Origin: Lepidodermella squamata
Taxonomy: Eukaryota; Animalia; Gastrotricha
Direction of reading: 5' to 3'
Length of the DNA: 64,000 bases
Assembly (NCBI GenBank): GCA_047495785.1
Contig: JBLDXI010000032.1
Coordinates: 186,001 to 250,000, forward strand
Positions within the stretch are counted from its first letter, which is position 1; each line of letters begins with the position of its first letter. Under the pieces are notes generated by a model that was not told the origin of the DNA, did no database searches, and saw nothing but the letters and a program-made list of their open reading frames with translations. Positions 16,577 through 63,700 of this stretch are shown here, in pieces. A program made the position numbers and the translations under genes.

Positions 16577-16666
16577 TCTTTTCAGGGACTTGACATTTTT
16601 TGCGAGTGCAACTGACCAAAAAAAAATCCAGATCAAGTAACAAAAAATCGCACAATGTTTTCAAGA

Positions 16667-16745
16667 GCAGTGGTGGCGTAGTGGTTAGAGAGGATGATGG
16701 GTTGTCTGAGAGGATGATTGTGCGTGGGTTCGAACCCAACAGCCT
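16667..16745 (+). other. tRNA-derived / Pol III type-2 promoter-like segment (SINE-head-like), not a functional tRNA
   Basis: A box TGGCGTAGTGG (16674-16684) and B box GGTTCGAACCC (16727-16737); no convincing acceptor or anticodon stems. Confidence 0.55.
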
Positions 16746-18006: not shown

Positions 18007-19822
<1,816 letters not shown>

Positions 19823-40419: not shown

Positions 40420-43400
40420 ATGACCTTTTGCCATCCACTGGTAATGATCGCGACTTTCTTCACTGTAGTCGAAACACAGCCTTCAAAGTTCAACTGGACT
40501 CTACCAATGCCGGGCCTCATAACATCCTCAAGCGGCTTGAGGAGCGGGAAATTGCGACTGAACATTTTAGCATCCATAAATTACGGTAAGACTTTGTCTC
40601 AATATCGTTTTCTGATCTCAATCTGATGTTTTCTTGAAGACGGAGCGATATACCCATTAGGACCACTATGCACTGAAGCTTTAAGGATCGGGCTAGATGC
40701 CCTAGAGCAGGCCAATGTTCTTCCTGAATACGAGCTTGCGGCAGAGCTTATCGATGATACGGTGAGCATTTTTTCCTATTGTAATTTCTGTTATACTCTG
40801 ATCGATCTCAGTGTTACCAGTACCCTGGAGTCGAGCGAATTGTTAGACGGTTTAATTCGGAGGACCCGGGCATCAACCGTGTCCCAATTATGACAGGGCC
40901 AATGTGCTCCCTCCATCGATACACTGGGCGGATGCTCCAGCATTATCAGATGATTGGGGTAGTATGATTTTTCAGTATTTCCTGGCTTTCTAATCCCATT
41001 TTAATACATCTCAGATCACAGCGATATCGCCAGTTCGCGAAGTTCAATCAATGCGAAATGCGTATCGCAATCTTTACGTAATGAATCCACCGGCCGAAGT
41101 CACATATCAAGCTCTCGCCGAGTTTGTTAATTCAATGGGATGGAGAAAAATTGCTGTGATAACTGAGTCATCCAGCTATTGGCAAGAGGTTGGCTTCAAA
41201 ATTTCATTTTTACGTGTTAAAAATTTCATTTTTGCGTGTTTTGCTCAACAGGTTGAAGGGTGCATTACTAAGGAGCTGAAATCGCGCAACATATCGATTG
41301 CAGGAGTTACTAAGGTGGTTGCTGATGCTGATCCGTCTATGATGGATTTCGAATCTGCTGTAGTCGAAACGATAAAATTTGACTCTAACATATTTCTGAT
41401 TAATACGTATCATACCGCCGCAGTTGCTTGCTGGTTCCACCGCTACAACATATCGGGAAGTGGCTACGTCTTCCTAATAGAAGGCCACGGAATCTTTTAC
41501 CCGAACGATCGAAGCCATCAGTTAAGCTGGTGCAAAGAGGCTATGTTACTCAAGGTAGGTTGATCTAGATTCGGTGGAGATTGGCATCGTATTTTCTGTA
41601 GATGTTGCTTAGCACCTTTCTCTATGATTTCTCATCCGCGGCGAATGATGATTCTTTGGGAGCCCAGAGTGATTCTCTCGGAATGACGGCACGGGACTTT
41701 GAAAATCGCTTGAAATCACGCATTCAACGTCCAGAAACGAATTCGTTGTGGTGGGAGTGGAGAACTTATTGCTACAGCCAAATCGTTGCGGCTGGCTTAG
41801 TTCTAAATACTACGGAATCTTATTTGAATTCAAGTTATTTTAGCTATCTACTTTAATTTTCAACTCAGTAATTTATTCAGGGAACGAAAGCTTGATTGAT
41901 TGGGCAACTGGCAGCAAGAACTTCCGCAACAATGGTCAAGTTATCGAGGAAGCTTTAAAAAAGGAATTGCATCGGCTACGATACAAAACCCTGTTAGGGT
42001 ATGATCTGCGATTCGATAACGTTACCGGTGCAAGCAAGGCGATTAGAAACGCCACAATTTATCAGATTAGGAGCCGTTCGAATGGAACAAGTATCTTGAT
42101 AGAAACAATTAAAATTGAGAAGGTCGGATCGTACTGGAGGAACTACTCTGGAAAGGGGTTATATACCCCAGGACAAGTCATCTGGCAAACGAAATCAGGC
42201 AAACCCCCTTATGATTCCATTCGAACTATTGTCATCGGCAACAATTTAATCTCTCCTTCAATCCGTACAATATTGCTAGGCAAGTCCACATACCAAATAT
42301 TTCTTGTTCAATAATGTTCTTGAAATGTAATAGTTATCGCAGCCACTTTGCTTGTTGGAATCTTTTGCATTTCGGCTATCAATGCTATCAAAGTTCGCCA
42401 GAAGAACCGCGCAGTTTTGAACTCATTCCCGCTGCAAAACTATCAGATCCTAATGAGTGATACGTTTTTGCTTCTGGGCGTTTTAGCTACGCCAGCGGAG
42501 TTTCAGGATGTCACTTCGACAAGGTGCATGGCAACAATTGGTCTACTCAACATCGGGCTGATCAACCTTATAACAGCCATGTCAGTCAAAATGATGGCAG
42601 CTATTTGGATCCGTGAAACTATTACTCTGAAGTTTGAATCAGCAAAAAGAATGAAATTCAACAGCAACTGGTCATCGAAACAGCGTTCTACGCATCTAGA
42701 GGCGCTCAAGCAACGGGAGAGAAAGCGCGTTGAAGACTACAAAAAGAAGCTGCGACCGCTATGCACCATCGGCCCTTCGATCATGTTGGTTTACAGTATC
42801 ATCTGGTTTACCGTAGAGCCACTTACTGTTTCAGTTGTGGACAACTACTTCGAAAATGCAGTTGATAGCATTCGAATTCGGCATTATACGAGGGTCTGTG
42901 CCCTCCCTCCGACTCTTGCGTCAAACGTTCTGCTCGGACTCTTTGCCACAATTTACGCCATATTGCTTTTAAGGCAAATACCACTTGCTTTCTATCTTCG
43001 AACGGTAAGGAATTTAGTTGAGTTATGTTATTCAGCTATTTCAAAATTCATTAGAGCTCACTGGAGTATATGAATGATTTGCACTTGGTGTCGACATCCG
43101 CTTATTGTACCTGCATATTCGTGCTTGCCGCAACCACTCTCCTTGCCTGTTTCTTCAACAACAACGGAAGTGTTGTTCAAACCGGCATCGCATTCACTTC
43201 CGTTGTTATCGTGTGCATAAGCCTAGGGACAGTATTTTTACCTAAGGTAAGTCTGTTTTAGGCCTATTTGCATTATCATTCCAATTTGTTCGTCATTGCA
43301 GTTCCGGCAAGGCTATTATCTTCAAACTCGACCGAAGAGACGTACTAACAATAAAGATATGCCAAAGATAGAGATTTCTACTCCCGTTCCGAACAATGAT

Positions 43401-43582: not shown

Positions 43583-45266
43583 TCATAAAAGAATGGCTTC
43601 AAGATAGATACATTCACGATTTTGAAATAAATGCGTCACCTTTACATCAGAGTCCAAAGCATCATCGCCGTACAAAGCACCTCTTTGATTTGCTAGTTGA
43701 GCAGGCCCGAGAGCCTCGTAAATTTTGTATAATTTAAAACGTGGGTGAGCTATAGTTGAGTTTAACCTTCTTCCTGTTTCGTCGCGATAGTTGCTCCAGA
43801 TTGGTCGATATAAAAACGGCTTTAGTGGGTCATTTTCAGAATTGAAGCTAAAAGCTTCTGAGATAGCGGTTAGAATGCTATCGAGATTAACTTGTTCAAT
43901 TGAGACAAACGCGTCGAGAAACTCGAATTTCCCACGCTCTCGAACAAAGAAATGAAGATGATACGTACTACCGTAAGACATGCAGCCTGAGGCTGGAATT
44001 TGCTTCAATTCAGCCTGCCGAATGCGATCAGCGACATGAATGCATAGTCGACAATTAGAGTGAACATTAGCAAGGTCTATAAGGGCGAGGAATTGAGCAG
44101 ATGGACCGGTTGTTTTCCAGGATAGATAGGCTTCATAAGCCGAGTCATCTTGCGACAATGAGATCATTTGACTAGCTACGGCTTGTACATCTTCCAAGGT
44201 GTTTATAACCAGTACTGATTGATTCGAAGGTTGAAAATCTGCGATATTAGGCGCTCCAATGATTACAGGCACGGTTCCTTCTTTTAGGGCCTGGAAGAAC
44301 TTTTCAGTAACATAATCGATCTCAATCGAGTTTTCGAAAGCTGAAAAATAGAAAAAGTGAGCAATCACAATCCAGCTAGATAATTAGCATACCTAGGTGA
44401 AATTTGTATCGACCGATGATGTGTTCTTTCTGCTCATACAGGGCGTTGCGCTTACGTCTGTATAGCGACTGCGCACAGCCGCCGAAAAAATCGACCAATA
44501 CAGGAGATATACTTTGAAGAGTCTCAACAGCTTTCAATCTGAAATTCATAGCATCACAGTTTGAAATGAAAGCTGAAGATAGAGCGATGGCTGATTTTCG
44601 CCTCGGAGGAGCCATGTAGTCGTGGAGAGCCCATGAAAAGTAAGGTACTGGTACGTCGCTGTCGAGGCGAACTGTCATCACAACATCGAAAAGCCGCCTG
44701 GCAGTCTCGAGGTCATTTAATTTAACGTATGCTGCTGATTCCATCGAACGATACACGGATAACACAGTTGATCGATTTTCGAAGGGCCAGAGGGTGAAAG
44801 CTGCGTCCATATCAGGCTGCTCACCAGTTACTACCTCCTGTTCCACCGAGGGCAATAAGATGCACCTTATAGAAGCCAGAATTATTCAAAATGAAATGGG
44901 ATAGCAGTCATGCGCCTACCTGATATCGCAATCAGTGACCTCCTGAGCAATCGTAACGGAATCTGAGTTCCCGATCACAATAGGTTGAGACTTGAAATCT
45001 CTGCTAGATAACTTTCGTCCAGAGTAAAATTTGTTAAACTGACGCCGTTTTGCGTCATACGCAGCGAATCGCCCAGACATGGCACCCCAAGCTAAAGAGT
45101 TGTTGGCTAATTTTCTGCTACGAGAATTCAGGCGCGGGCTGCTGGTGCTTAGTGGCATGAAACTAACATTCTCGTCCAATGTGTCTATGCTTGCGATGGC
45201 CAAAAGTCCGATGAATAATACTATTTCGGCCCCGATCACGATAAAAATCTTCGAAACTTTCTTCAT
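43583..45266 (-). CDS. GT10 alpha-1,3-fucosyltransferase, plant core-FucT-like, copy 1 (exons 44920-45266, 44393-44865, 43583-44340)
   Basis: Type II TM; RSMES; SDVPVPYFSW; FISNC..NFRL; YKFHLAFENS..DYVTEKFFQAL..GTVPVIIGAPN; HSNCRLCIH; VRERGKFE. Confidence 0.9.
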
Positions 45267-48233: not shown

Positions 48234-48651
48234 TATTATTTTTTTTATAAATTTTAATAAATGATTTTGACGTTCAAAAAATAAAGGCAAGTGGTTTCTT
48301 TTTATCCCGCACTTTCGCACAGCACAAAGCAGCCTGGCATTCAAATGCGGCTAAAATAGCAGCAAATAACGTTGAGACGAGAGACGAGAGAATAGAAATT
48401 GTTAAAATAACAACACATTTACAGGTGTGTTGTGGCATGAAATGACTGCGGTCATTCTCTTGACAATTGCAGTCTACGCTGAATAGTGCTATGAGCACAC
48501 GCTGTGTTGTAGTCTAGTCTCATGCAGATAACACTTTTATTATATTTAATATATATGCACTCCAAGATTAAACTATTTCTTAGCATTTATTAAAGTTATT
48601 GCAGCCTTTTTCACAGTGGGGAATGCTTTCAAGTCATGCTTTGCTGACGTT

Positions 48652-50162
48652 ATGAATCGAAGAATGCTAATCAAAGCTATTTCAATTACTGTGATCGCCA
48701 TTTTGGTTCTCGCGAATTTCAAAACCGCAGTCCAGACTCTGTTTCCAAACAACAGAAAGACCGAAAGCAGGATTCTACCCGCATTTCAAGATAAAAACGT
48801 CGGCGCCCTTCATCGGGAGGAAGTAAACTACGATGCTGATCAAGATGAAGCCGTAGAGAGAGATGACGATTTCGGTTCGCTTGCAACGATTTCTATTCCT
48901 TACAAACAACCGTCTGAGCAGAAGACGCAGGACGCATTTAATCAAGGACAAGGGGAAGACAGCTATATACAGTCTGTCTACGAGCCATCTTCGGAACTTG
49001 AAGAGCCGGGCCTTGCCGAGCTAGATCAAATCAAGGACAAACGGATTGAGGAGGAGATCGAGAAGAGGAAACATCGAGCTGCTGAAATCTGCAATATTTA
49101 TTATGGGAAACCGAAAGCTACCGTTGACGATAATCTGTTGCTGTCGATTTTGAGGTCAAGATCTCAGTAAGATACTGCTGAACTTCTTAGTCTGAATTAT
49201 CACCTGAGATTTTCAATTTTCCAGTATGGTACATGAAAAGTACAAAATGATTGTCTGCCTGTAAGTTTGCGTATAAGTTGCTGCTCATAATTCCTATGCC
49301 CTTTGCCCATTAGAAATTACAAGGTTGGAACGACAAATCTGTTGAATTATCTCATTCAAATCAGTGAGTCGCTGACGAAATCTTACAGCTACAACCGAAC
49401 AGCAGTGAATAAGGTTCACTCCCGCAACTTCACTACTCCGCACCTCAAATGGTTGATTCACTACCCAAAAGAGAAAATGCTCCAAATGCTGAACGATCCA
49501 AGTTACAAGCGAGTCATGCTGGTCCGTGATCCGCTTGAAAGATTTGTCTCCTCCTGGAAAGATAAGCTGACCAAAGAGCCAGCATCTCGAATGCCATCGG
49601 CTAACAGGCATTATCAAATGGTAGGTCCTCTTGAAAACACTTTCTTGATCAATATTGAAGGGTCCTTTGCAATAGGAGTTGGGAAGAACTGTGATAAAAA
49701 ATGTGCGGAAAAATGCAACAAAGGAAGAGATCCAGCGAGGTTACCCGGTTGCTTTGAGCGAATTGTTCGAATTTATGAAATTAGTCGATCAAAATGCTCA
49801 ACAGTGGGATCATCATTGGTAAGTGTTGATTAGATTAGTTTGGACTGCATAAGAACTTTTCCTAATTTAGGCGGCCTTACTTACACAACTGCCTCCCTTG
49901 CCACCTCAGGTACGACTTCATCGGCCATCTTGATAGCAAGGAAAACGGCGGCTTCGGCGCGGAGCTGGAGTACCTTGCACGCCAAGCTACTGGGGCAACA
50001 ACCGTACCAAGGGTTCCTCTACCCCCTGAGCGTTACGTTGACAAGAAAGCTGATTTGAGGACAGTTCCGCCAGAACTAATACGTGATATTATTACTCGAT
50101 ACTATCTGATGGACTATGCCGTATTCGATTATCCAATGCCGGATGCGTTTTCTAGCAGATAA
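48652..50162 (+). CDS. Carbohydrate sulfotransferase (Sulfotransfer_2 / CHST8-14-like), multi-exon
   Basis: Type II TM; 5'PSB VCLNYKVGTTNL (across the 36-nt exon 49225-49260); 3'PB LVRDPLERFVSSWKDK; HW..CLPCHLRYDFIG; DYAVFDYP. Confidence 0.88.
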
Positions 50163-50579: not shown

Positions 50580-53010
50580 ATGATTCTTGCATCGTCCATA
50601 GCAGTCATTTATCTGCTAGCAACTCCACTGAATGCCCAAACCTTCAAATATGTTGCGAAAGATGACGGAAAGGTGTTAGATCAAGTTCCTCTAAGGATTC
50701 CATTGATTGCGAATCAACGTGAGTTTGTCTCTCAATGTGGGACGTCAACCTTATTTTCGTGTTATTTCAGGCGAACATGGACAACTGGCCACAGAGGGTA
50801 TCAAAATTGCCCTTGAGGCTATTCGAAATTCCTCGACGCTTATCACAAGTTACAACCTTGAAATTGACACAACTGATGACCGTTGCAACTCTGCTGTTGG
50901 AGTCTCAATGGTCGTCAGCATCCTGAATAGCATAACAGAAGGTGGTTCGCATACTTTTCCTCTGATACTGGGTCCACACTGCACTGGGGGAACCTTTTCA
51001 GGCTTAGCTTTCCGCCCGAATAATGTAGTCAGCTTCTCGACCTGGATTCTAGCAGTTGGTGACTCCAGGTTTGGCTTGATGCCTTCTTTTGATTCAGTCT
51101 TCATGGCTTTACCGTATTTCATCAACGGCAACGGCTGGAAACGCGTTTTTCTCTTCGCCGACAGTCTCATCACGCGTCGTAAACTCAATGAATTTCTCGC
51201 GGAAGGATTTCAAAAGCTGAATATAACTTTAGCCGGGGTCGTAACAGTAATTTTTGACGGGGCGGAACCACCCAGCTACTCAGTTATCCAGAGCTCTGTT
51301 GGCGAGTTAGCAGTAATGGACCCTCGTATCATAATTTTGAATACTGCATTGACAGTGAGTGTTGCATGCGCACTATATGATTTTAATCTTTTCGGTCCTC
51401 AATACGTGATACTGGCACCAGGTAATGCAATTTTCCTCCCTGATGCCCCTAACAAACCTCCAGGCTGCAGCGAAAAGATGCTGTTCGAAGTTCTTCAATC
51501 CGTCATCTACTTCTCACATGGAAAACGGCTTGATATCTATCCAGATTTAAAAGATGTTCTTGGACTGACTGGTCGGCAATTTGATGAGATCTTAAAGTCA
51601 AGGGTTCCAAATGCTGAGTTCCTACCAAGCTGGCATTTTGTTCGAGACCATTACTACACAGAAGTCGTTGCTGCTGCTGTTGTGCTCAACAAAACAGAAG
51701 CTTTACTTAGAAACCGTGGCGAGACCCTGGCGGACTGGGTTTCTTACAAAGAAAAATTCAAACAAAATGGAACATTTATAAGTTCTGTCATTCGTGAACA
51801 AGTCATCAACTTGCGTTTTGATAGCTTCACTATGGAGCCTGAACAACCTCTACGGACATTGAAAGCTCTAAGTGCTTTCTATCAAGTTCAAACAATTGAT
51901 GACCCTAGAATTCCCCTCACCCAGCGCATCAGATCAGTTCCGATTGCAACTGTCGACACAAAATTCGAACCTCCCAAGTACGGGCAAGGGCCAGCGAAAG
52001 TGAAATGGAGGACCTTCGATGGACGTGCACCTCTAGACAGATTCACAATTTACCAGATAAATATACCTGCAATGAATATTTTGGGAAGCATAATTTTCAA
52101 AACTCTGGCGTCAATTCTTGTCGCCATCCTCCTTCTATCCATACTCTTGAGCTTGGTCCTACGCAAATCACCGAAGTATCAAGATTCCACTCTACTTACA
52201 GCTATGCTTATCCTTATCTCACTTGGCACAATCATTTTAGCGATTTCCATAATTTTGTTCCCTCAAAAAGGATCGGCGAATGATCACTTTTTCTGCATGG
52301 CGGGGGCTGCGACAATCGTAGCAGGGATTTCTATGATTTCTTGCGGATTACTGGGTTATCTTCATGTTGCATACGTCGTTGCATTCTTCCACAGCAAAAC
52401 TGTTGTTAAAGAAAAGCGGAAGAGCAAACCCTCAATACAGCCAGCGTTGTTAGCCAATCAGATGAAGAAACTAACGCCTCCGAATCCCGAAATAATTCGC
52501 TTGATCAAAGCGTCTCAGAGGCCTACTATACTGCTTTCTTTGGGCTACTTTTTTATGCACGTGGCTGTTACAACCGCTTGGTTTCTAGCTGATCCATATG
52601 AAACCTACTTGTTTTACAGCAGTTTGGAGGTAGTTAATCCAAGTCTGGCTTTACAATACGTGAAATATGGTTGCAGGTTCTCAGCTGGGTCAAATCACTC
52701 TATCGGTTTCTCTTTATTTCTGGCCGCAACTTATCTGTTGCTATATCTGAGAACTCTTTATTTGGTGTTTTGTCTGCGGAAGTTTAGAACGGCCGAACTG
52801 AGCGACATTCATTCGACTCGGTTTGTGAGCTATAGCATTGGTATCGTAGTAATTGCGGCGGCGACCGCTATTCTAGCGTTCTTCAGGGAGGCAGATCCAG
52901 AAACCTTGGATATCATCATTTTTCTGGGTGTATTAGCGATTTGTGGAATTGTTGTTTGTGTTTTAGTGGTACCTAATACTCGCAAAAATGTGAAAGTTTT
53001 GCAATCCTAG
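50580..53010 (+). CDS. GABA-B-like class C GPCR 2 (one intron, 50719-50770)
   Basis: Signal peptide; VFT (DDRCN..LILGPHC, GWKRV); seven hydrophobic segments, with WFLADP and ELSDIH; very short C-tail. Confidence 0.85.
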
Positions 53011-53552: not shown

Positions 53553-56115
53553 ATGAAATCATATCTAGAACTAACAAGGATCTTCGTTTTGACAACCATT
53601 TGCTCAAGCTCACTGCTGGTTTTTGCTCAAGCTCCGTCAGAATGGCCGAAAATAATGAGAGCCAATATGTCGAATACACTGCAATCAAACAAGTCGCGGA
53701 CTCAAATTAGGATCCCTCTTATTGGAAGCATCGGTAATTTCTTGTTTATTACGCCGCTCAATAACAGTGATAACCTTCTTTTTCTGGTCTTCAGCTGGTC
53801 TTCAAAACGCCCATGGACCTCTTGCATTTGAGGGCATTCAAATCGCTCTCGACGCCCTAATGAATTCCACGAATCTATTCTCGAACTACGAAATAGTCAT
53901 CGAGCTGTTTGATGACAGGTGTAATGCCGCTTTCGGCGTCGATATGCTCATTAAAATGCTCGACAACATGTGGAACGGTAAGGTGAATTACGCTCCACTA
54001 ATGCTGGGTCCTCACTGCCCAGGTGGTACTTTCGCTGGCCAAGCATTTGGCCCTAATAATGTGATAAGCTTCACAACTTGGGCCGTATCGGTTGGGAGAT
54101 CCAGGATGGGCTTGATGCCGTCATTTGATGCTATTTACAATGCGCTGCCGTACTTTCTCGCCTCGCAAAATTGGAGGAGGGTTTTCCTTCTGACAGAAAC
54201 CTTACAAACTCGCAAGTTTCTTGACGATTCGATAAGTCTTGGTATGCAAGATGTAAATATGACTGTTGCTGGGGTAGTACGAATAACGTTCGATGGCACT
54301 AATCTCCCAACTCACGAAGCAGTTGGTCAAGTGATTGGAGAGCTGGCTAGTCTCGACCCTCGGGTCATGATTTTCAACACAGCCATGACAGTCGTAATTT
54401 CGTGCTATTTGTATAAATTCAAGCTCTACGGCTCGCAGTATGTCATACTCTTCAATGGAAACACGATTTTCTACCCTGACTCGCCTGCTAAGCCTCCATT
54501 CTGCTCGGAAGATCATTTGTTTGAGATATTGAAGTCTGTCATCTACTTCTCTCACGGCAAGAGGTTGGATGTATTCCCCGATGCAAAAGATGTCGTTGGC
54601 ATGTCAGGGCGTGTTTTCGATAATATGATGAAATCTAGAATTCCTGACGCTGAATTTCTGCCGCAGTGGCACTTTGTACGTGACCATTATTACAGTGAGG
54701 TTATTTCTGGCGCAGTCGTGCTTAATCGAACGGAGGCGCGTTTGGCGGAAGCTGGTCTAGGAACCATTAAGGATTGGCTCACCTCGGGCGGAAATTTTAG
54801 GAAAAATGGAGATCTCATAAGTTCTATTATTAGAAGTGAAACTGAAGATCTGAAGTATGAAAGCTTCACCCTCGAAAGCACTCTGCCCATCCACAGCTTC
54901 AAAGCCCTGAGTGCGGTGTATCAAGTCCAGGTGTCAGATGATACAAAACTAAGTTATCGAAAGCGGGTCCGCTATTACCCTGTTGGTTCTGTTGACACGA
55001 CTTACAGCCCTGTTCTAGTTCGCTATGGTCCATTCAACATCAAATGGAGAACTACGGATGGCCAGGCACCGGCCGACTCGCTCAGGATTCTTGCTACCAA
55101 AGCCCCGATAATGACTTTTTTAACCGACGTAGTTGTATCGATTATTGCAGCAATCCTACTCACACTGGACCTTGGTGTGATGCTCATCTTTTCCCTCAAG
55201 AGATCATCTCCTATCATACAAAATTCAGTGGTACAGTTGAGCACCCTCGTACTTATTGGTAGCATCCAGATGGTATGCACGGTCTTCATCTTCCCTCGGG
55301 CCTCTAGCCACGAAGCTAGTAAGTACTGTATGGCAGGGTCCTTCTCGTTCACTATCGGCTTTACGATGATAGCAGTAGCTTTGTTGGGTAAACTCCATCT
55401 TGCCTATGCCACTGGTGTTAAAGCGAAGACTTTGACTGCAAACCTGAATAGCTCCAGAGCCTCAACAAATAAATCCGGAGCTTCTCGTCCAAGTTTAGGG
55501 GTAGCTCCAGCACCCACCCCTAGGGCCAGCGCTAATAGCCGAGGGCCTAGCCAAAGTGCTAGTAGCATGATGATGACTCCAGCCCCAAAAGTCAAAACAA
55601 TAATAGACCGTCAATTTTTCGACCGAAATATCAAGCGTTGCTGCATTGCTGTGGTCATGTATGTTCTCATCGAGACCGCATTTATGAGTCTTTGGTTCGC
55701 CATCGAGCCGATAGGAACGTCTGTCCGTCATGGCGACCTTCAAATCGTTCATGAGAGTTTGGGCTACAAACCCTATCAAATTGGCTGTGAAATAGCGGCA
55801 AGTTCAACTATTTCTGTTGGCTTTATCGGTTTCTTCGTCATTTGCTACGTGCTGGTGTTCTTGCGTTCGTTGTACCTTGTTTTCGCTTTGAAGAAGTTTG
55901 AGCTTGATGAAATCAACGACTTGCATTTCACCAGAACTGTCACCTACTGTATTGGCATAGTTTTCATAGCTTGTGGCGCTTTGATTGTCGCCGTTTTCAA
56001 AGATAGCGATCCTGGCACTATTCAAACGGTATTTTTTGCGGGAATCTTCGCCATCCATGGACTATGCTTTAGTGTGATCTTCGCGCCCAAAGTAATCATG
56101 GTGCTAAAGACATAA
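53553..56115 (+). CDS. GABA-B-like class C GPCR 3 (one intron, 53734-53794)
   Basis: Tandem paralog of GPCR 2 (shared SVIYFSHGKRLD, WHFVRDHYY, LKALSA); 7TM ends IFAPK. Confidence 0.85.
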
Positions 56116-56715
56116 GTGCTAGTCTGTAAACAACGGCTGGAACTATTCGCTTCGGTGTGGTCTTCGTTACTGAAGACTTAGACTTGTCCATTGGGACTCT
56201 TAGACTCAACCTAACGCATTACTGAGCGTAGTTTTATACCAAACGTATACATTTGTAATATTCTTGAATTGTAATAAAGTGTACAGTGTACGAATGTTGT
56301 ATCATATCAAATCCACCTTAATCGCACCCTCATATGAGCGATCGATTAGATAGAGGCGACATTTCTGGTGGAACGTGGCTATCTACGCTCATAAAAAGCA
56401 CAACGCGAGGTCAGGTTAAACCTTACGCCGTTGTAATTGCATTTGCTGTTGCAGTATCTAGGTATGCGTTGGCACTTATTACACACGACACAAAAGGCTG
56501 TTTACAAGATCACACTGTATGCGAAACCGTGGTCTCCTTTTACAGTACGTCTAGCATTCGCATTGTTGTGAAAGTTTCAAATTTGTGCATAAAAAACTGG
56601 CTAGCTAACGGTGTTTCACACATTAGTCCACAAATTGTGCACAATTTCTCATTACGGATGACCCTTTGTTTAGGATGGTAAAATTGCTTAAACAGGCGAT
56701 GCTTTTCGATCAATT

Positions 56716-57910
56716 ATGACTGCTTCCCCTTATCGAGCCGCGTTAGTTGTTGCAGCGGTGATTTCAACTGTTCCAATTTTCCTGGTCCTTCGCGGGTTGT
56801 ACCATCAATGGCAACTCGAAAGGCTCTCCAACAAATGGCAAAGGCTGGATGCATACAGCCAGTTCCCATCTCAAGCGGGAGACATTTGCGCGGGCCAAAA
56901 CAAAACTTACAACGCTTCCTTAATGCATGATCCTTACTTTTTTGGGCAAATGCTTCTAAGTGGGAATTTGTAAGATTTTTCCAATATAGCTTCTAACAAA
57001 ACGATCAATTTTCCCTATTTTACAGTATTGTGAACGAACGCTACAATTTCATCGTATGCTTGTAAGGAATGCAGTGTTTCTCATGCACTTCTGGTCACTT
57101 TCTTTTGCCTCTGTAGTAATCGTGACGAGCCAGCTTTCGAAGCTGTTCAGCACTACTTTGACTTCATCGGAAGTCCGTCGCCGAAATACGAAGCTCTAAT
57201 TAGCGCCCTGCAGAAAATGCTAGCTGCAGAGTCGAAGAAACAGGAATATCTGGAAACCAAGCGTTTAATGCTTCTTGAAGACCAAGCGATTCGATTGGCA
57301 AATCCACGACTCCCAAAAGGCTTTACATGGATTGCTTTGGTCGGGAACCCACTGAATCGACTACTCGATGTGCTACAGCTGATGAATAGCAATCTTGATG
57401 ATTACATCATGCGGCCAAGATATTCGTTCGACCCTGTAGCGGTAATTAGGAATCCCAGGCAAATACCCACCTTAATATGAATTTTTGTTGTAGGATTTAG
57501 TTGTGAGGATTATCAAGAAGATGCGACCAAAGGCGATTTTGGCATACTCTCAGCCAGACATTACCTTCGAAGAGTTTTTCACCTTTCTCAATACAATGAC
57601 TCCAGCTGACGAATCTGTGCTGCTCGGAGGTGGATTGTTCACGCCTTACTACGACATCTGCAAGCCTTGTGATATCAAATACGACCACCGCTTCCGTCTG
57701 GAGACTTTCACGTCTGACTTCCAAGATTTGAGCCAAAGACTGGTCGGGAAGGACCAAATAATGGAATTTGGACCAGTGCTACAGCCTCTCCCGGATTTAG
57801 TAACTGCTGAACTTGACAAATTACCTCGTAATATTGTTTCTCAAGTCTTAACTAAACTATTTTCAACTGATTACAAGTTATTTGGTTACGAAATTCCGGC
57901 TCAAAAATAA
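56716..57910 (+). CDS. Carbohydrate sulfotransferase-like protein with degenerate PAPS motifs
   Basis: Type II TM; 36-nt exon 57026-57061 homologous to that of ST1; ITFEEF, PYYDICKPCDIKYD..RLETF and DYKLFGY. KVGTT is replaced by RDEPAF and VRDPLER by VGNPLNR. Confidence 0.75.
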
Positions 57911-57940
57911 ATCATTGTTTTTATTCATGAAAGACTTTTG

Positions 57941-59524
57941 TCATACAAAAATCACTTCGAGTTGGATGCAGTCTTTTTTCGAGCTGAAGAGACGAACAAC
58001 TTTCTCGTCGGAATCAATTGCCGAACGACCGAATAGAACTTGACCATGAGGTGTCCCGACCTCGTAGATTCGGTACAGGTTGAAAGAAGGTGCTTTGTTA
58101 CGAGGGAAAGCTCCTGGCGGGTGCCGACGGCCAATTTCGTCCCTAACCCAACTCCAAATCGGCCAGTACTCCTTGCCCTTAGTTACCGCCTCGAAAATCG
58201 TTTGATTAAGGCGGTGATATGTTAACTCTGAGCTGTAGATGAAACCTTCGCTGAAGTTGAATCGGCCCCGTTCTCGAACTTGAAACCGGAAGACACTTGT
58301 CGTTGAATTAAGCTGGCAGTTACAGACTTCCTGTTGTTTCGACTTTGCCCTCTCCAAACTTCTAATACGGTCTGCAATTTTGATGCATAGCCTGCAGCTT
58401 GAATGGACCACCGATAGATCAACCAACGCCTTGAATTGTTGCGAAGGGCCAGTTTTCTTCCAGGCCAGCAATTTTTGATACTCATTCTCATCAGCGGAGA
58501 GTTGTTGCATCTTATCCGCAATATTTAAGACCTCAGCCAGGGTTTCGATGACTAAAACTGAGTTAGTCGAGGGTTGAAATTGGCGAACGTTAGGAGCTCC
58601 GATAACAACAGGTACAGTCCCTTCAGCTAGACTTTGGTAAAACTTCTCAGTTACGTAATCAATATCGTTCGAGTTTTCAAAGGCCAAATGGAACTTGTAC
58701 TTGCCCATGATTGCCAATTTGTCAGAGTCCAGCCGCTTTTGGTTAGGCCCACATAAGCCATAGACCTCGACTATCGGCACAGGAGATCGCCGGCTTTCGT
58801 CCTCGAGGACTTCAATAGCCTCTGGTCTGAAGTTGCGAGATTCGCAGTTGGAGACAACAATCGACGACAGAGCCGCGGCAGTTTTTTCTTGAGGTGGCTT
58901 CATTATATCGTAGAGTTCCCATGAAAAGTAAGGGACAGGCACGTCGCTGTCCAGTCTAGGCGTCATAACTAGGTCAAAAGCAGATTTCGCCTCTTTCAGC
59001 CTAGATTTTTCGCAGTAGACACTCGATTCCATGGTTCGGAGGACAGATAGGCCAAGGTAAGGCTTTTCCCGAGCACTCCCGGGTTCTTCCACAAAACTAG
59101 CGTCGAAATAAATGCCCTTATCTTCGTCGCTCAACTTCGATTCGGGTGGGTAGTGAATGCAAGGAACTGGGCAGTTGTTGATTAGGGAAGATTCGTCGAA
59201 ATTAGAGCCGCCCATCCTAATAGGATTTTTCAAAAAATCTCTCGCGGGGCCTGAATCCTTATCTCTTTTAGTTCGGAAAAATCGCTGGGACCACCACAGC
59301 TTTGCAGATTGGCAGGTTCTAAAGGCCTCCTCAGCGCTGCCTGGGTTACTCCTCAAGACATTTGGAAGATGTTGATTCAAGGTGATGGCTAAATTGTTTC
59401 GAGTCTTCACGCTTGAGTAGTATAGGAAAATGACGGCAATCTCGACGAAAACACCTGCAATCAGGAATATTGAAAAGAAAGATGGCTGGCGAAAATTCCT
59501 CGGCAAAAATGCGAGAATTTTCAT
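57941..59524 (-). CDS. GT10 alpha-1,3-fucosyltransferase, plant core-FucT-like, copy 2 (intronless, 527 aa)
   Basis: RTMES; SDVPVPYFSWELYDIMKPPQEKT; SNCESRNFR; YKFHLAFENSNDIDYVTEKFYQSLAEGTVPVVIGAPN; WKKTGPSQQFKALVDLSVVHSSCRLC; VRERGRF; ends LEVIFV. Confidence 0.93.
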   Translation of the reverse strand: MKILAFLPRNFRQPSFFSIFLIAGVFVEIAVIFLYYSSVKTRNNLAITLNQHLPNVLRSNPGSAEEAFRTCQSAKLWWSQRFFRTKRDKDSGPARDFLKNPIRMGGSNFDESSLINNCPVPCIHYPPESKLSDEDKGIYFDASFVEEPGSAREKPYLGLSVLRTMESSVYCEKSRLKEAKSAFDLVMTPRLDSDVPVPYFSWELYDIMKPPQEKTAAALSSIVVSNCESRNFRPEAIEVLEDESRRSPVPIVEVYGLCGPNQKRLDSDKLAIMGKYKFHLAFENSNDIDYVTEKFYQSLAEGTVPVVIGAPNVRQFQPSTNSVLVIETLAEVLNIADKMQQLSADENEYQKLLAWKKTGPSQQFKALVDLSVVHSSCRLCIKIADRIRSLERAKSKQQEVCNCQLNSTTSVFRFQVRERGRFNFSEGFIYSSELTYHRLNQTIFEAVTKGKEYWPIWSWVRDEIGRRHPPGAFPRNKAPSFNLYRIYEVGTPHGQVLFGRSAIDSDEKVVRLFSSKKDCIQLEVIFV

Positions 59525-60709
59525 GTTTGTCGGCAGTGAATGAAAATTACTATAGGAAATTGTCCTTTAGAGATGCAGCCGGCATTGTCGATTATTTACG
59601 CGGCACGAGTGTGAGGGAAAGTCTCTTTGCGAGCTCATCTTAATAATGAAGTGTCGATGCGAGTTTTAAATATTAATAATGCGGTGCTGGTATATATCGA
59701 TTTAGGGTGGATTCTATCTCTCTATTATATGCAAATTATTCCCAGGCCACTTGTTTAGGAAACAATGCTTGATATTGTTGCATCCTTGGTAATGATGAAT
59801 GCTGAATGATGAAAAACGAAAGAAAAATTCAGGTAAAATGTACGGTAGAAGAGAGGCCTTGTTAAATCACAATCCCATAAGTAACGCAAACAAAAAATAC
59901 GGGGAAAAGGGATCAGAAACTCTAAAATGAGAGGCAAAGTCATTTCTCATGGCCAAAAAAACTTAGAATAATCCATAAGAATATTTATCAAGTATTTTTC
60001 ATGTGAATGGGGTTAAAAAATCCGAAGAAATGTGATCCAACCAGTTAAAAGCCAAAAATTACCGAACCAGTTACCATCGGGTTTTTCTCCGGTAAATTTT
60101 AAATCTCTTCGGTAAAATCATGGATAACGTATGGGAGATCCTTCCAGTGCGCTCAATTTCAAAAAATTAGTTTAATTTTCTCCAAAAATTTGCGAACTTA
60201 CAAAATGGTTGCGCAACTTAAAAGGGCACGCTGTAATGATCAATAAAATGTTTGGATAATTGGAAAATTTTATGGTATAGGTAATACTCATACTTAATTA
60301 GCACATTCATATTTTTGTTCGAATCTTTCATTCCAAATTCATGAGTATAACGATCGAATTATTCATTTTTTATACATTAGTGTTATCTTTATATCGAAAC
60401 GTAGGGATAACCGATATCTTCGCACACTTAACGCAGTGATTTCCACCACGCAAAAATGGGATAAAACAATAAAAATAAACAACTAGTTCTTTCAAGCACT
60501 CGTGCAACCGACTTGGGATAAACAAACAAAAGCAGCAGACGAAAAGCTAGCCATTTTTGCAATGTTTTTACGTACAAACGCGTTCTACCTTATCTACGCC
60601 CGCCCGCAATAAGCCGATTTCTGATGGAGGCATCAGAAAAGCCGGGCCGCTACATTTAAAAAGTTCCAGATTTTTTTTTCATCTCTTCCACCAAGAGCGA
60701 AATTTCTTC

Positions 60710-63700
60710 ATGAAGACAAGATGGTGGTTGCTATTACTGTTTCTGCTTCTTCTCTGCAGTGGACTTCTCTTTCTTGGGGTGGTACTTAAAATTCGCCAAG
60801 ATTACATTCGAGACCTCGAAAATCTACAAGCGATCACCGCCAGAATCCGCGAGGAGCAATTAACCGGAGCTACGGCGGCTTCGAGTTTAAATTCCAGCCT
60901 TAAAATCACCGTAACTCCTCGGCCGCGATTTCCACCTCTGAACAAAGCCGCGGCGTTAGGCTCATGCCAATCGTCGAATATTTGCGAAGATCAAATAAGG
61001 GCCATGTTCGGCCATATGAATTTACGAGCCGATCCTTGCGATAATTTTTACGAATTTGTATGCGGCAATTATCAACGCGTTCATCCCGTTGATGAGGGCG
61101 ATAATTACACGACTTACAATGGATATCTTGGAAAATTGGCAAAAACTAAGATGATTAATCTCTTTGGTAATTTCAAATTCTTTTACATTTTCAAAAATAT
61201 AAATAAATTCTATTAAAATTGCTTACAAATTAAAAAAGCCAGTTTATTAAATTTCTTTTAATTGAAATTGAAATTGAAATTATTGAAATTTATTAAAATT
61301 AATTTTGAAATTTTAAAATCCATAGTTTAAGCAATACCGTAGATCGGTACAATTTTGAACAAGTACAAAGTTGAACATTTTTTCAAAAGTACAATTTTGA
61401 ACGAGCGTTTGCATTGAAAATTTCGTTAATGTTCAAAATTGTACTTCACACTCACGAAAGTACAATTTTGAACACTTTCATTTTTTTCAATGCAAAAACG
61501 TTCGTTCAAAATTGTACTTTTGAAAAAATGTTCAAAGTTGTACCCTGTTCAAAATTGTACCGCTCTACGGTATCTCAGATTTGAATTCTTTTAATTAATT
61601 TCAGTAAAATGCAATTTAAATTTTAAATTTTTCAACAGGCGATCCTTCAAAATTTATGGAAGATTCTGAGCTAAAGGTCAAGGCCTTTTATGATACCTGC
61701 ATCCGAGCCAGTGATTGGGCGTCAAATGACGCCAGTTTCCGAACTCACCTGGCCCACCTCGGTGGGTGGAGTTATTACCGCTCGAAAACCGGCGCCGAAA
61801 TTTTAAGTCTCAACGAACGCATCAATCGTCTAAGCTACTACACCCATGACCATTTATTCAAATTTTACGTCGACAATCTTGAAGGCTCTTCAAACCAGGT
61901 TTTTGTCGTTTCTGTCGGGTCGTTTCGCGGCGCAGCGATGCCAGATGAACATGCCGAGAGCGTTTCCGTGCTTTTCGAACGCCTCCTCGGGCCTTATTTC
62001 TCGCGAGTTCGTGGTAAAATTAAAACCTTCGAGAAGCAACTGGTGGAGGTGGATAGCGGCTGGCGAGACGCGTCTTACGTTGAGACAAGCGCCGTGCGTT
62101 TGAATAGATGTTGCAATATGTTGAACTGGACGTCGATAATCGACAGTTTTGCTAAAAATGTCGGCTATAACGAGATGCGAATTCAGATTTTCTACACTAC
62201 ATCTACGTTTTGTTCGTATTTGACGAGGCTGTGCAAATTTATGGAAAATCAAATGAGCACAAAACAGGTGAGTGGAAAAACAATAATAATTAAATTAAAT
62301 TAACTATTATTTTTTTTATTTTTTAACTTCTTAAACTTTTTAAAATTTGAACCGAAATACCAAGATCAACCGTATCAAGACAATTTTGAGAAAAAGTTTG
62401 AAATTAAAATTGAAATTCTAATTTCATGATAAAGGAATGATTTTTGGTTTCTATTTCAAAGTTCTCAAAAGAAAATCTAGCACCAATTTTGGCTGGATGG
62501 GTCTAAAATTTCAATATTCCTACTTCAAAATTGATGCACCCAATTACCCTTGGATTTTGTATTACCTAGTATGCCCTCAATTATGTAGGTAGGCACAATT
62601 TCAATGTTAATTTCTATAAGTCGGGTGACATCGAAAAAATCACTGATTTTTGGAATCGATACTCGATACGGTAAATCGATATCGGCTCAGCCATCAATCG
62701 GTTGGGCAAGATACCCAATAAAAAGTTTAGATTCCAAAGTTAACTTCAACGTTCAGCTCGGGAAACCATTTATTTGGGGAAATTGAGTGCTGGAACCCCA
62801 TTGGAACCCCGAATTTAGCGCGCCCAACTTAGGTTATTAGGCGCCATAATATTATGATGATATTTTTTATTTTTTTTCCCCAGGGACGTGATATTCTTGA
62901 AGACTACCTCATCACAAAAGCTTTCCTACCTTACGTCGATATAATCAACCAAACCGATGCCCCGAATATCACAGCTGAGCTGCAACAAGCCTGTCTCACC
63001 GAAACCGCTACCTCCCTCCCATTCGCAGTAGCCTCAATCTACCGAAAACACCTATTCGACGGCTGGCAAAATATAGACGAACTGCGGCAAATCGCGTCAG
63101 AAATCATCACAAGCTATTCGACAGCAGTATCCGACTCGCCGCTATTGTCGCCTGGGTCAAAGTCTGAAATTAGGTCAATTTTGGACAAAACCGCATTTCG
63201 CGTCGGTCCGCCTAATTGGGCGCTCAATCAAACGCAACTAAACCAATTTTACCAACCGTTTAATTTCGTTACTAATGCTAGTTATTTTACTAACAAACTT
63301 CAAGTTCGAGCATTTAATTTTCGCCAACATTTACGGGCCGTTTTCTCGGGCAGTCGGAACTTCGAACTAGGCACCATGTGCCCGTTAGACGTTGCCGTTG
63401 CGATGTTTAACCCGACTAATACGGTGGTCTTTCAATACCCGGCAGCTCAGAGGCCGAATTTCGACCCTGAATATCTGGACGCTGTTAGGTTCGGCAATGT
63501 CGCGACAGCTATTGCGCACGAACTTGGCCACATTTTAGCGCGATTTCTCGACCGAAATTCGCCGTTCTACATCCGCGACGACCCTCGATTACTCTACCAG
63601 CACAAGTCTTGCATAGTCGATTTCTACTCATCCCTCGCAGGGTCGTATAAAATCGATAGAAATTTCGCGCAGGGGACATATCTGCAGGACATTGCCGATG

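What the first reader, a model, noticed from the sequence alone, without database searches (positions are those of the whole stretch)
57941..59524. Plant-type core alpha-1,3-fucosyltransferase in an animal genome: candidate horizontal gene transfer
Seen in sequence: a GT10 enzyme with SDVPVPYFSW-x-YDIM, SNC..RNFR, W-x-GPSxxFKALVD..VHSSCRLC and a C-terminal domain (CxC..VRERGRF..PIW..LYRIY..EVIFV). Established, from recall: these motifs, and especially the C-terminal domain ending EVIFV, typify land-plant core N-glycan alpha-1,3-FucTs (Arabidopsis FUT11/FUT12, mung bean FucT). Drosophila FucTA, C. elegans FUT-1 and vertebrate FUT3-11 lack that domain. The neighbours are clearly metazoan, and the gene ends 30 bp from a host sulfotransferase-like gene, which argues against contamination. 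Inference: acquisition from a plant, alga or other microbial eukaryote, possibly altering N-glycan core fucosylation.
Basis: partly seen in the sequence, partly recalled or inferred. Interest (0 to 1): 0.9.

Follow-up and report, generated by a model that had tools for sequence, protein, structure and literature searches.

The report
Plant-type fucosyltransferase genes in an animal
An invertebrate genome carries an intact, host-integrated gene for a fucose-adding enzyme built like the plant enzyme AtFUT11, but it belongs to an old, multi-copy animal branch of a family found across eukaryotes, so a transfer from plants is not supported.

Summary
Window 57941-59524 (-) is an intact, intronless 527-aa GT10 gene. 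Its sequence (E 4e-78) and predicted fold (TM 0.90) match Arabidopsis FUT11 over the N-terminal subdomain, donor domain and C-terminal subdomain.

It is truly in the host genome. DNA depth is even across both junctions, two haplotypes are present, composition is host-like, and it has its own AATAAA signal. Contigs of a spliced RNA run lie on parts of it.

- The "plant-specific" C-terminal domain also occurs in diatoms, a raphidophyte, Rozella, an aphelid and green algae. A shorter form occurs in a choanoflagellate, a rhizarian and a chytrid.
- The gene sits in a six-member clade (100/98) with a second, intron-bearing copy in the window (43583-45266) and four metagenome genes, three of which lie beside animal-type genes.
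- This clade branches outside the group that holds all plants. AU tests disfavour union with land plants (p 0.028), Viridiplantae (0.027) or Holomycota-like rows (0.031).

My reading is an old acquisition from an unsampled non-plant eukaryote (about 0.5), with an ancestral relic as the main rival (about 0.3).

All six clade members lack the acceptor-binding Glu197 of AtFUT11, so the acceptor may differ.

The scan's first readers flagged at least five further copies elsewhere in this genome.

The parts
57941..59524 (-). FucT1: intronless gene for a 527-aa type II membrane GT10 fucosyltransferase of AtFUT11 architecture (stop codon at 57941-57943).
   Evidence: ORF. Pfam PF00852 E 1.6e-29. PDB 9s6a_A E 4.2e-78. 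AlphaFold model pLDDT 89.2. Foldseek top hit 9s6a_A, TM by target 0.90.
59414..59479 (-). Signal-anchor (transmembrane) segment, about residues 16-37, followed by a low-confidence stem to about residue 90.
   Evidence: Hydrophobic run in the translation. Long helix 16-47, then pLDDT below 60 for residues 41-90 in the model. The Golgi type II topology is inferred from the family.
58904..59323 (-). N-terminal acceptor subdomain (about residues 68-207, AtFUT11 88-200). It carries C71, C118, C122, the catalytic base E166 and Y199. L204 stands where AtFUT11 has Glu197.
   Evidence: Alignment to Arabidopsis P0091 with AtFUT11 numbering. Residue roles from PMC12929593.
58445..58903 (-). GDP-fucose donor (Rossmann) domain, about residues 208-360. 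S225, N226, R233, K269, N284, E293 and K294 are all conserved.
   Evidence: Pfam stretch 219-388.
57944..58444 (-). Second Rossmann / C-terminal subdomain (about residues 361-527, AtFUT11 348-501). It holds HSSCRLC (H374, S375, C377, C380), C403, VRERGRF, PIW, LYRIY and the terminal EVIFV.
   Evidence: C-terminal HMM built from the 28 plant-type sequences listed (the two window proteins plus 26 homologs). Model pLDDT is mostly above 90 here. Foldseek alignment to 9s6a_A spans 465 columns.
57911..57940 (.). 30-bp spacer between the convergent stop codons of the sulfotransferase gene and FucT1. It holds an AATAAA for the minus-strand FucT1. The plus-strand gene's AATAAA overlaps its own stop codon.
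   Evidence: Sequence read directly. Use as poly(A) signals is inferred.
43583..45266 (-). FucT2: second paralog, 525 aa after removal of two GT..AG introns (44866-44919, 54 nt; 44341-44392, 52 nt). About 44-46% identical to FucT1.
   Evidence: ORFs, tblastn, splice junctions and in-frame translation, tree placement.
56716..57910 (+). Neighbouring host gene for a type II carbohydrate sulfotransferase (Sulfotransfer_2), with at least one confirmed intron (56970-57116). It is convergent with FucT1.
   Evidence: Pfam. A contig of run X2 joins 56969 to 57117, removing a GT..AG intron and keeping the frame open.

Best explanation
FucT1 is a working host gene for a Golgi type II, GDP-fucose-dependent, inverting alpha-1,3-fucosyltransferase. 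It has the three-part architecture of Arabidopsis FUT11: an N-terminal acceptor subdomain that supplies the catalytic Glu, a Rossmann donor domain, and a C-terminal Rossmann subdomain tied on by disulfides.

It is one of several diverged copies of a clade that so far contains only sequences from this genome and from metagenome contigs, most of which also carry animal-type genes. That clade is a deep branch of a family spread over many eukaryotic groups, and it does not derive from land plants or green algae.

The most likely history is a single old acquisition from an unsampled non-plant microbial eukaryote by an ancestor of this animal lineage. The gene then duplicated, took on host composition and, in one copy, gained introns.

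Shown: gene integrity, fold, conserved donor and catalytic residues, host integration, clade structure.

Inferred: enzymatic activity, Golgi location, direction and age of the transfer.

Because the clade has replaced the acceptor-binding Glu197 (and mostly Tyr163 and Asp120) of AtFUT11, the acceptor is probably not recognised as in plants and may not be the plain GnGn N-glycan core.
For: Identity and fold:
- Pfam GT10.
- AtFUT11 structure 9s6a: E 4.2e-78 by sequence; E 4.8e-43, TM 0.90 by fold, against 0.61-0.64 for human FUT9.

Catalytic and donor residues: E166, S225, N226, R233, K269, N284, E293, K294 are conserved. So are Y199, H374, S375 and six Cys positions: C71, C118, C122, C380 and C403, which align to five of the six disulfide Cys that PMC12929593 names for AtFUT11, plus C377 of the CxxC motif (residue roles and disulfide list from PMC12929593).

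Host integration:
- DNA run X1 covers the gene and both flanks at about 70-140x.
- Contigs bridge 57596-58072 and 59415-59932.
- Two haplotypes are present at about 40 of 94.
- GC 0.47, GC3 0.51 and RSCU correlation 0.60 with neighbours.
- AATAAA 13 nt after the stop codon.

Function retained: the listed allelic differences in the ORF are 12 synonymous to 8 non-synonymous. Contigs of the spliced, RNA-like run X2 lie on parts of the ORF and on no intergenic bin except the high-copy repeat.

Old animal clade:
- FucT1+P0001, FucT2, P0121 and P0002+P0004 form a clade with 100/98 support.
- P0002/P0004 lie beside INTS15, CCSMST1 and HMG-box genes. P0121 lies beside an EGF_TEN gene.
- Paralogs are only about 44-46% identical.

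Not from plants:
- The clade branches outside a 97/85 group holding Heterosigma, Rozella, an aphelid, Coccomyxa, charophytes and land plants.
- AU p is 0.028 and 0.027 for union with land plants or Viridiplantae.
- FucT2's introns do not match the six conserved land-plant intron positions.

Foreign origin favoured:
- No named animal appears among the 120 best 90%-clusters or the roughly 35 looked-up representatives of the best 150.
- Five of six clade members are single-exon.
- Union with the Holomycota-like rows is also disfavoured (p 0.031).
Against: - The family exists in other opisthokonts: Rozella, an aphelid, Batrachochytrium and the choanoflagellate Salpingoeca helianthica. An ancestral gene lost in most animals therefore cannot be excluded.
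- No donor clade encloses the animal clade, so no positive phylogenetic signal of transfer exists.
- The AU p-values are only about 0.03, and the groups were partly named after seeing the tree.
- The host phylum is unknown. Absence from other animals rests on hit lists in which most rows carry no name.
- No ordinary animal GT10 (FucTA, FUT-1, FUT10/11) could be placed in the tree.
- P0001 carries no flanking animal gene. In principle it could be a further paralog of a close relative rather than an ortholog from a distant one.
- Activity, linkage and acceptor are untested.
Confidence: 0.5

Rival explanations
1. Ancestral relic. The AtFUT11-type enzyme was present in the opisthokont and animal ancestor and has been inherited vertically in this poorly sampled animal lineage. 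Most other animals lost it and kept only the FucTA/FUT10/FUT11/Lewis-type GT10 genes.
For: - Family members occur in Holomycota (Rozella, Amoeboaphelidium, Batrachochytrium) and in a choanoflagellate.
- The animal clade is a deep, separate branch rather than nested in a donor.
- The paralogs are old and diverged, and composition is fully host-like.
- The host's own gene families are barely represented in the databases: a 797-aa GPCR finds a single weak hit. Relatives of the host may therefore simply be unsampled.
Against: - It needs many independent losses across animals.
- Union of the animal clade with the Holomycota-like rows costs 28.6 lnL units (AU p 0.031).
- The choanoflagellate sequence lies in a different (sister) clade with a shorter C-terminal domain.
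- Five of six clade members lack introns, although neighbouring host genes have them.
- No named animal appeared in any list.
Confidence: 0.3
2. Transfer from a land plant or green alga. The deep position in the tree would then be an artefact of fast evolution after transfer.
For: - The best named hits are all streptophytes or chlorophytes at 36-43% identity, E down to 1.8e-81.
- The nearest Atlas clusters by features and by fold are streptophyte.
- Long stem branches (0.3-0.8 changes per column) inside the animal clade leave room for attraction artefacts.
Against: - AU p 0.028 for land plants and 0.027 for Viridiplantae.
- Rozella, an aphelid and a raphidophyte are closer to plants than the animal clade is.
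- No plant intron position is shared.
- Plant dominance of the hit lists reflects the number of sequenced plant genomes. At the level of 50% representatives, Rozella (245 bits) scores about as high as plants (about 257 bits).
Confidence: 0.1
3. Contaminant or chimeric contig, or a dead gene. The ORF would belong to an alga or plant in the sample, or would be a decaying insert.
For: Only the plant-like best hits. Run X1 may be the sample from which the window was assembled, so it is not fully independent.
Against: - Depth is even across the gene and both flanks, with half-depth haplotype variants as in the neighbours.
- Short-read contigs bridge both junctions.
- There is a second copy with host-sized GT..AG introns 13 kb away.
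- Composition is host-like.
- The ORF is intact with all catalytic and donor residues.
- Synonymous allelic changes are in excess.
- RNA-like contigs lie on the ORF.
Confidence: 0.03

Closest known systems
Arabidopsis thaliana FUT11 / FucTA (core alpha-1,3-fucosyltransferase, GT10; PDB 9s6a; PMC12929593)
   Same: - Same three-part architecture, including the N-terminal subdomain that the paper calls distinct to AtFUT11 among solved alpha-1,3-FUTs, and the C-terminal Rossmann subdomain.
- 36% identity over the fold alignment, TM 0.90.
- Catalytic Glu, all listed GDP/pyrophosphate ligands, Tyr192, His361/Ser362 and the disulfide cysteines are conserved.
   Different: - Glu197, whose alanine mutant keeps only minimal activity, is Leu here and never acidic in the six clade members. 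29 of 31 other plant-type sequences have Glu or Asp there.
- Tyr163 is Cys and Asp120 is Leu.
- The gene is intronless, against six conserved introns in land plants.
- It sits in an animal genome, in a separate deep clade.
AtFUT11-type GT10 of protists and early fungi (Rozella allomycis EPZ31356.1, Amoeboaphelidium KAI3662589.1, Heterosigma, Stephanodiscus KAL3789308.1, Coccomyxa, Chara GBG84902.1)
   Same: Full-length C-terminal domain, the HSxCRLC motif, Glu158/Tyr192, and similar length. These show that the family is not a plant invention.
   Different: They keep Glu197 and Tyr163. They group with plants to the exclusion of the animal clade.
Animal GT10 enzymes: Drosophila FucTA, C. elegans FUT-1 (core alpha-1,3), FUT10/FUT11 (POFUT3/4), Lewis-type FUT3-7/9
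   Same: Same CAZy family and GT-B donor domain. FucTA and FUT-1 perform the reaction that the plant enzyme performs (PMC11949838, PMC6935376).
   Different: - Human FUT9 aligns only over residues 179-357 at 41.8 bits and TM 0.61-0.64.
- The nearest chordate FUT10 cluster scores 0.90 against 0.97 for plant clusters in the Atlas.
- Whether FucTA, FUT-1 or FUT10/11 carry a related C-terminal domain was not tested here, because no such sequence could be fetched.
Plant-to-animal and microbe-to-animal transfers of carbohydrate-active enzymes (for example the whitefly Bemisia tabaci; PMC11800479, PMC9599486)
   Same: A carbohydrate-active enzyme whose closest named relatives are plants, integrated and apparently functional in an animal genome.
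   Different: In whitefly the genes nest within plant clades. Here nesting in plants is disfavoured, the clade is old and multi-copy, and no donor can be named.

Membership tests
CAZy GT10 / Pfam Glyco_transf_10 fucosyltransferases | Significant match to the family profile above the curated cut-off | tested here: met
   PF00852 scores 103.3 bits against a cut-off of 23.9, E 1.6e-29, residues 219-388.
CAZy GT10 / Pfam Glyco_transf_10 fucosyltransferases | GDP-fucose binding residues of the donor Rossmann domain (AtFUT11 S218, N219, R226, K256, N271, E280, K281) | tested here: met
   S225, N226, R233, K269, N284, E293 and K294 are all identical, in all six clade members.
AtFUT11-type (core alpha-1,3) subfamily | N-terminal acceptor subdomain with the CxxxC pair and the catalytic base Glu158 in the M-E-S motif | tested here: met
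   C118, C122 and M165-E166-S167 are conserved. 9s6a aligns from query residue 94. The fold match has TM 0.90.
AtFUT11-type (core alpha-1,3) subfamily | C-terminal Rossmann subdomain after the HSSCRLC motif (AtFUT11 348-501), tied by a disulfide to the N-terminal part | tested here: met
   The domain is modelled with pLDDT mostly above 90. C71 and C403 align with C91 and C391. The other clade members match the C-terminal HMM at 1e-35 to 1e-48.
AtFUT11-type (core alpha-1,3) subfamily | Acceptor (G0 N-glycan) contacts shown to matter in AtFUT11: Tyr192 and Glu197 | tested here: not met
   Tyr192 is kept (Y199). Glu197 is L204 in FucT1, and L, L, T, I, F in the other five. E197A leaves only minimal activity in AtFUT11. 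FucT1 and P0001 have a Glu one position earlier (E203), whose role is unknown.
AtFUT11-type (core alpha-1,3) subfamily | Core alpha-1,3-fucosylation of the innermost GlcNAc of GnGn-type N-glycans | not testable with these tools
   Needs a recombinant enzyme assay or glycomics.
Horizontally acquired gene (eukaryote to animal) | Physically part of the host chromosome | tested here: met
   Even depth, bridging contigs and shared haplotype structure. Host genes lie on both sides.
Horizontally acquired gene (eukaryote to animal) | Gene tree nests the recipient's gene inside a donor group with support | tested here: not met
   The animal clade is sister to, not inside, the group of plant, algal and Holomycota sequences. 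AU disfavours union with land plants, Viridiplantae or Holomycota-like rows.
Horizontally acquired gene (eukaryote to animal) | Absence from other animals | tested here: inconclusive
   No named animal appears among the 120 best clusters or the looked-up representatives. However, most of the best 150 representatives carry no name, the host phylum is unknown, and no animal genome collection could be scanned.

The most novel reading that the evidence does not exclude
An under-sampled animal lineage captured a protist AtFUT11-type fucosyltransferase long ago and expanded it to at least half a dozen copies. It then re-tooled the acceptor pocket, with Glu197 replaced by hydrophobic residues in every copy. 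The enzymes would now fucosylate a new, lineage-specific acceptor rather than the plain N-glycan core. They may act together with the carbohydrate sulfotransferases that sit tail-to-tail with them, which would give this animal a glycan epitope unknown in other animals.
Probability: 0.2. Interest if true: 0.7.

Novelty: new member of a known kind. Interest (0 to 1): 0.55.

Why it matters
Core alpha-1,3-fucose is the cross-reactive "anti-HRP" epitope shared by plants and some invertebrates. In the invertebrates studied so far, the enzymes that make it are described as animal-type GT10 proteins.

Here an animal carries enzymes of the plant/protist architecture, now understood structurally through PDB 9s6a, as an old, expanded gene family.

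- **If the family was acquired:** it is a rare case of a eukaryote-derived glycosyltransferase domesticated by an animal.
- **If it is a relic:** it shows that the AtFUT11-type enzyme predates the plant-animal split and was lost from most animals.

Either way, it corrects the idea that the C-terminal domain marks a plant enzyme.

The clade-wide loss of Glu197 gives a concrete, testable prediction of changed acceptor specificity.

Tried and rejected
- **Host identity.**
  - A search with the neighbouring 797-aa GPCR gave one weak unnamed hit.
  - The gene's exact product is not on record.
  - Rfam found nothing in the window.
  - An Atlas look-up of the RasGEF exon gave no useful taxon.
  - Sample accessions occur in no held paper.
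  - The phylum therefore stays unknown.
- **Named animal GT10 sequences for the tree.**
  - A profile of the 45-row outer clade (A1) again returned plants, plus Batrachochytrium and protists. That clade is therefore not an animal clade.
  - P0169, from the outermost clade, resembles chordate, cnidarian and arthropod clusters in the Atlas. It lies, however, on a gene-dense, protist-like metagenome contig.
  - I therefore do not call that clade metazoan.
- **JGI metagenome scan** with the animal-clade alignment found no confirmed relative.
- **Viral vector.** IMG/VR holds only distant GT10 cores (at most about 30% identity, residues about 180-360, no C-terminal domain).
- **First structure prediction,** run without an alignment, was useless (pLDDT 35). 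It was replaced by the alignment-based model.
- **Shared introns with plants:** none.
- **Papers.** No held paper reports a plant-type GT10 in an animal. Both et al. 2011 and Rendic et al. 2007 are not held.
- **GC3 of the FucT2 exons** was computed out of frame and is not used.
Full report
**1. The observation**

One search lists an ORF of 527 aa at exactly 57941-59524 on the minus strand, from ATG to stop without interruption. Two spacers differ slightly: SW-EL-YDIM and W-KKT-GPS.

Pfam places residues 219-388 in Glyco_transf_10 (E 1.6e-29). The best solved structure by sequence is 9s6a_A at E 4.2e-78 over residues 94-462. Human FUT9 follows far behind at 5e-10. PMC12929593 identifies 9s6a as Arabidopsis FUT11 bound to GDP and the G0 N-glycan.

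The plus-strand neighbour is a Sulfotransfer_2 exon that ends at 57910, so the two stop codons are 30 bp apart.

**2. The gene is part of the host genome**

Laying three public runs on 55800-61300 gave the following.

- Run X1 (DNA, probably the source species) covers the gene and both flanks at about 70-140.
- Its contigs bridge both junctions (57596-58072 and 59415-59932).
- Variant positions sit at about 40 of 94 in the gene as in the neighbour, which means two haplotypes.
- Of the 20 listed allelic differences inside the ORF, 12 are synonymous and 8 are not. This points to purifying selection, although the list is incomplete.
- Run X2 holds a contig that joins 56969 to 57117. This removes a GT..AG intron of 147 nt from the sulfotransferase gene and keeps its frame open, so X2 is spliced RNA of this species.
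- X2 contigs also lie on parts of the FucT ORF at low depth. They lie on no intergenic bin except the high-copy repeat at 59848-60215.

GC (0.47), GC3 (0.51) and codon usage (RSCU r = 0.60 with pooled neighbours) are host-like. The 30-bp spacer holds an AATAAA for the minus-strand gene 13 nt after its stop.

The surroundings are of animal type:
- three class C GPCR genes;
- two Sulfotransfer_2 genes;
- an M13 peptidase;
- a RasGEF/PDZ exchange factor;
- an actin whose best matches are vertebrate, C. elegans and Drosophila actins.

Contamination or a chimeric contig is therefore rejected.

**3. It is one of several old copies**

tblastn of the protein against the window finds a second gene at 43583-45266 (-). 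Removing two GT..AG introns of 54 and 52 nt gives an open 525-aa protein with all the motifs. It is about 44-46% identical to FucT1.

Earlier first-reader notes of this scan flag at least five more copies. Two lie beyond the end of this window, 12.7 kb and 1.06 Mb away. Others lie on other pieces of the genome. I could not read those.

**4. Relatives**

Among 5.8 billion proteins, the best hits are three unnamed metagenome proteins from one ENA sample, followed by hundreds of land plants and green algae.

| Hit | Source | Identity | Coverage |
|---|---|---|---|
| P0001 | ENA metagenome | 42% | 99% |
| P0002, P0004 | ENA metagenome | 36% | 81-82% |
| Land plants and green algae | named records | 36-43% | mostly 82% |

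(All.)

P0002 and P0004 are tandem genes on a contig that also carries INTS15, CCSMST1 and HMG-box genes, which are animal-type families.

The exhaustive search of 1.84 billion representatives ranks the hits as follows.

| Protein | Bits | Note |
|---|---|---|
| P0001 | 439 | metagenome; no flanking animal gene |
| P0121 | 347 | beside an EGF_TEN gene |
| P0122 | 300 | unnamed |
| P0002 | 300 | metagenome, beside animal-type genes |
| Plant representatives | about 257 | |

Look-ups of representatives show that the family is not a plant family. It includes:
- Rozella allomycis;
- the aphelid Amoeboaphelidium;
- a sequence on a gene-dense, fungus-like contig;
- the diatom Stephanodiscus;
- the raphidophyte Heterosigma;
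- Coccomyxa, Chara, Mesotaenium and Closterium.

In neighbouring clades it includes the choanoflagellate Salpingoeca helianthica, the rhizarian Leptophrys and the chytrid Batrachochytrium salamandrivorans. No named animal appeared in any list.

**5. The C-terminal domain**

I built an HMM of the region after HSSCRLC from 28 plant-type sequences.

- It matches full-length (positions 1-136) throughout the 56-row plant-type clade, including Rozella, the aphelid cluster, the diatom and the animal clade.
- It matches from position 33 on in the sister clade with the choanoflagellate.
- It matches in part in the chytrid-containing clade.

The consensus of that chytrid-containing clade still reads SDVPxPYFSW, VHSxCRxC, VRERGxF and ends in FV.

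According to PMC12929593, this region (AtFUT11 348-501) is the second Rossmann subdomain of the acceptor domain, tied by disulfides to the N-terminal subdomain. It is therefore an integral, ancient part of this enzyme type and not a plant addition.

**6. Phylogeny**

A FastTree of 145 rows and a careful IQ-TREE of 55 rows under LG+C20+F+G4 PMSF agree on the main points.

- FucT1+P0001 (100/96), FucT2, P0121 and P0002+P0004 form one clade (100/98).
- That clade lies inside the full-C-terminal-domain clade (100/99).
- It is sister (95/85) to a group (97/85) that unites Heterosigma, Rozella, the aphelid group, Coccomyxa, the charophytes and the land plants.
- The diatom pair branches first.

AU tests of alternative groupings:

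| Animal clade forced with | Log-likelihood cost | p-AU |
|---|---|---|
| Land plants | 27.1 | 0.028 |
| Viridiplantae | 28.6 | 0.027 |
| Holomycota-like rows | 28.6 | 0.031 |

The p-values are modest, and the groups were partly chosen after a first tree. I read them as "disfavoured", not excluded.

FucT1 is closer to P0001 than to FucT2. This suggests that the duplication predates the split from whichever organism carries P0001.

**7. Introns**

Arabidopsis and Physcomitrium share six intron positions, after residues 118, 172, 252, 288, 340 and 416 of P0091.

The two introns of FucT2 lie elsewhere. One is inside the CxxxC pair (codon 116, phase 2). The other is just before AFEN (codon 274, phase 1).

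The Batrachochytrium gene and five of the six animal-clade genes are single-exon.

**8. Structure and residues**

With a 66-sequence alignment, AlphaFold gives pLDDT 89.2 and pTM 0.84. Foldseek's top PDB match is 9s6a_A (E 4.8e-43, TM by target 0.90, 36% identity). FUT9, mango FUT13 and H. pylori FucT all score 0.64 or lower. The nearest Atlas fold cluster is streptophyte and is aligned over residues 26-527.

I mapped AtFUT11 residues through the Arabidopsis sequence P0091, whose numbering is offset by one.

- **Conserved:** the catalytic base (E166); every GDP/pyrophosphate ligand (S225, N226, R233, K269, N284, E293, K294); Tyr192 (Y199); His361/Ser362 (H374, S375); and the cysteines (C71, C118, C122, C377, C380, C403).
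- **Replaced:** three acceptor contacts. Glu197 is L204, Tyr163 is C171 and Asp120 is L114.

Position 197 across alignment A2 (FucT2):

| Group | Glu or Asp at position 197 |
|---|---|
| Other plant-type sequences | 29 of 31 |
| Chytrid-type sequences | 17 of 20 |
| Animal clade | 0 of 6 (L, L, L, T, I, F) |

E197A leaves AtFUT11 with only minimal activity. FucT1 and P0001 carry a Glu one residue earlier (E203), and its role is unknown.

**9. Reading**

*Shown:* an intact, host-integrated, apparently transcribed and constrained gene for an AtFUT11-type GT10 enzyme. It is a member of an old, multi-copy clade associated with animal-type contigs.

*Inferred from family knowledge:* a Golgi type II inverting alpha-1,3-fucosyltransferase that uses GDP-fucose, with E166 as the catalytic base.

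*Uncertain:* the acceptor, because of position 204, and the origin.

| Origin | Probability | Main argument |
|---|---|---|
| Old acquisition from an unsampled non-plant eukaryote | about 0.5 | Needs one event; fits the intronless copies and the lack of named animal relatives |
| Ancestral relic | about 0.3 | Fits the presence in other opisthokonts and the deep branch; needs many losses |
| Plant or green-algal donor | about 0.1 | Disfavoured by the tree, the AU tests and the introns |

**10. Limits**

- The host phylum is unknown.
- No named FucTA, FUT-1 or FUT10/11 sequence could be fetched. Their position, and whether they hold a related C-terminal domain, was therefore not tested.
- Most representatives carry no taxon.
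- X1 may be the assembly's own sample.
- RNA evidence for FucT1 is patchy contigs only.

Noticed in passing
window 43583-45266 (-): Second AtFUT11-type paralog (525 aa), with two short GT..AG introns (54 and 52 nt) at positions not shared with land-plant genes. It also lacks Glu197 and Tyr163.
   Followed up: yes
window 40230-43073, 50707-53010, 53722-56115 (+): An array of three diverged class C GPCR genes (ANF_receptor / 7tm_3). Two are single long exons. The 797-aa one finds only one weak relative among 5.8 billion proteins, so this is a fast-evolving, lineage-specific receptor family interleaved with the glycan enzymes.
   Followed up: partly
window 48616-50058 and 56716-57910 (+): Two Sulfotransfer_2 (carbohydrate sulfotransferase-like) genes in the same array. 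The second is tail-to-tail with FucT1 at 30 bp and has RNA-confirmed splicing of a 147-nt intron (56970-57116). Functional pairing of sulfation and fucosylation is possible but untested.
   Followed up: partly
window 59848-60215: High-copy repeat upstream of FucT1. Summed contig depth is 4,000-17,000 against about 90 for the flanks in run X1, with many variable joints and loose ends. It is probably a short interspersed or miniature element.
   Followed up: no
window 59540-59560 (-): A polypyrimidine tract ending in AG (tttcctatag) lies about 27 nt upstream of the FucT1 ATG. It may be a 3' splice or trans-splice acceptor. Earlier notes of the scan suspect spliced-leader operons in this genome.
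   Followed up: no
window 18007-19810 (-): Actin gene in two exons with very high GC3 (0.78-0.82), against 0.42-0.67 in the other genes. This is a strong codon bias typical of a highly expressed gene.
   Followed up: no
window 55800-61300: High heterozygosity. Runs of allelic differences appear at about half depth, several per 100 bp in places, in both the FucT gene and its sulfotransferase neighbour (run X1).
   Followed up: partly
L002 435-4101: On a metagenome contig with animal-type genes (INTS15, CCSMST1, HMG-box), two clade members (583 and 591 aa) sit in tandem 140 nt apart. Each has long inserts between the HSSCRLC motif and the C-terminal domain.
   Followed up: partly
PMC12929593, section 7, versus alignment: The paper lists a disulfide C124-C326. 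Residue 326 aligns to Met in all sequences, and the conserved Cys of the CxxC motif is at 364. This is probably a misprint in the paper.
   Followed up: no
window 1828-2283 (-): ORF with the C-terminal tail typical of a non-LTR retrotransposon protein (RPRGRPKLRWID-like motif), probably a transposon remnant. The motif was recognised from memory only.
   Followed up: no
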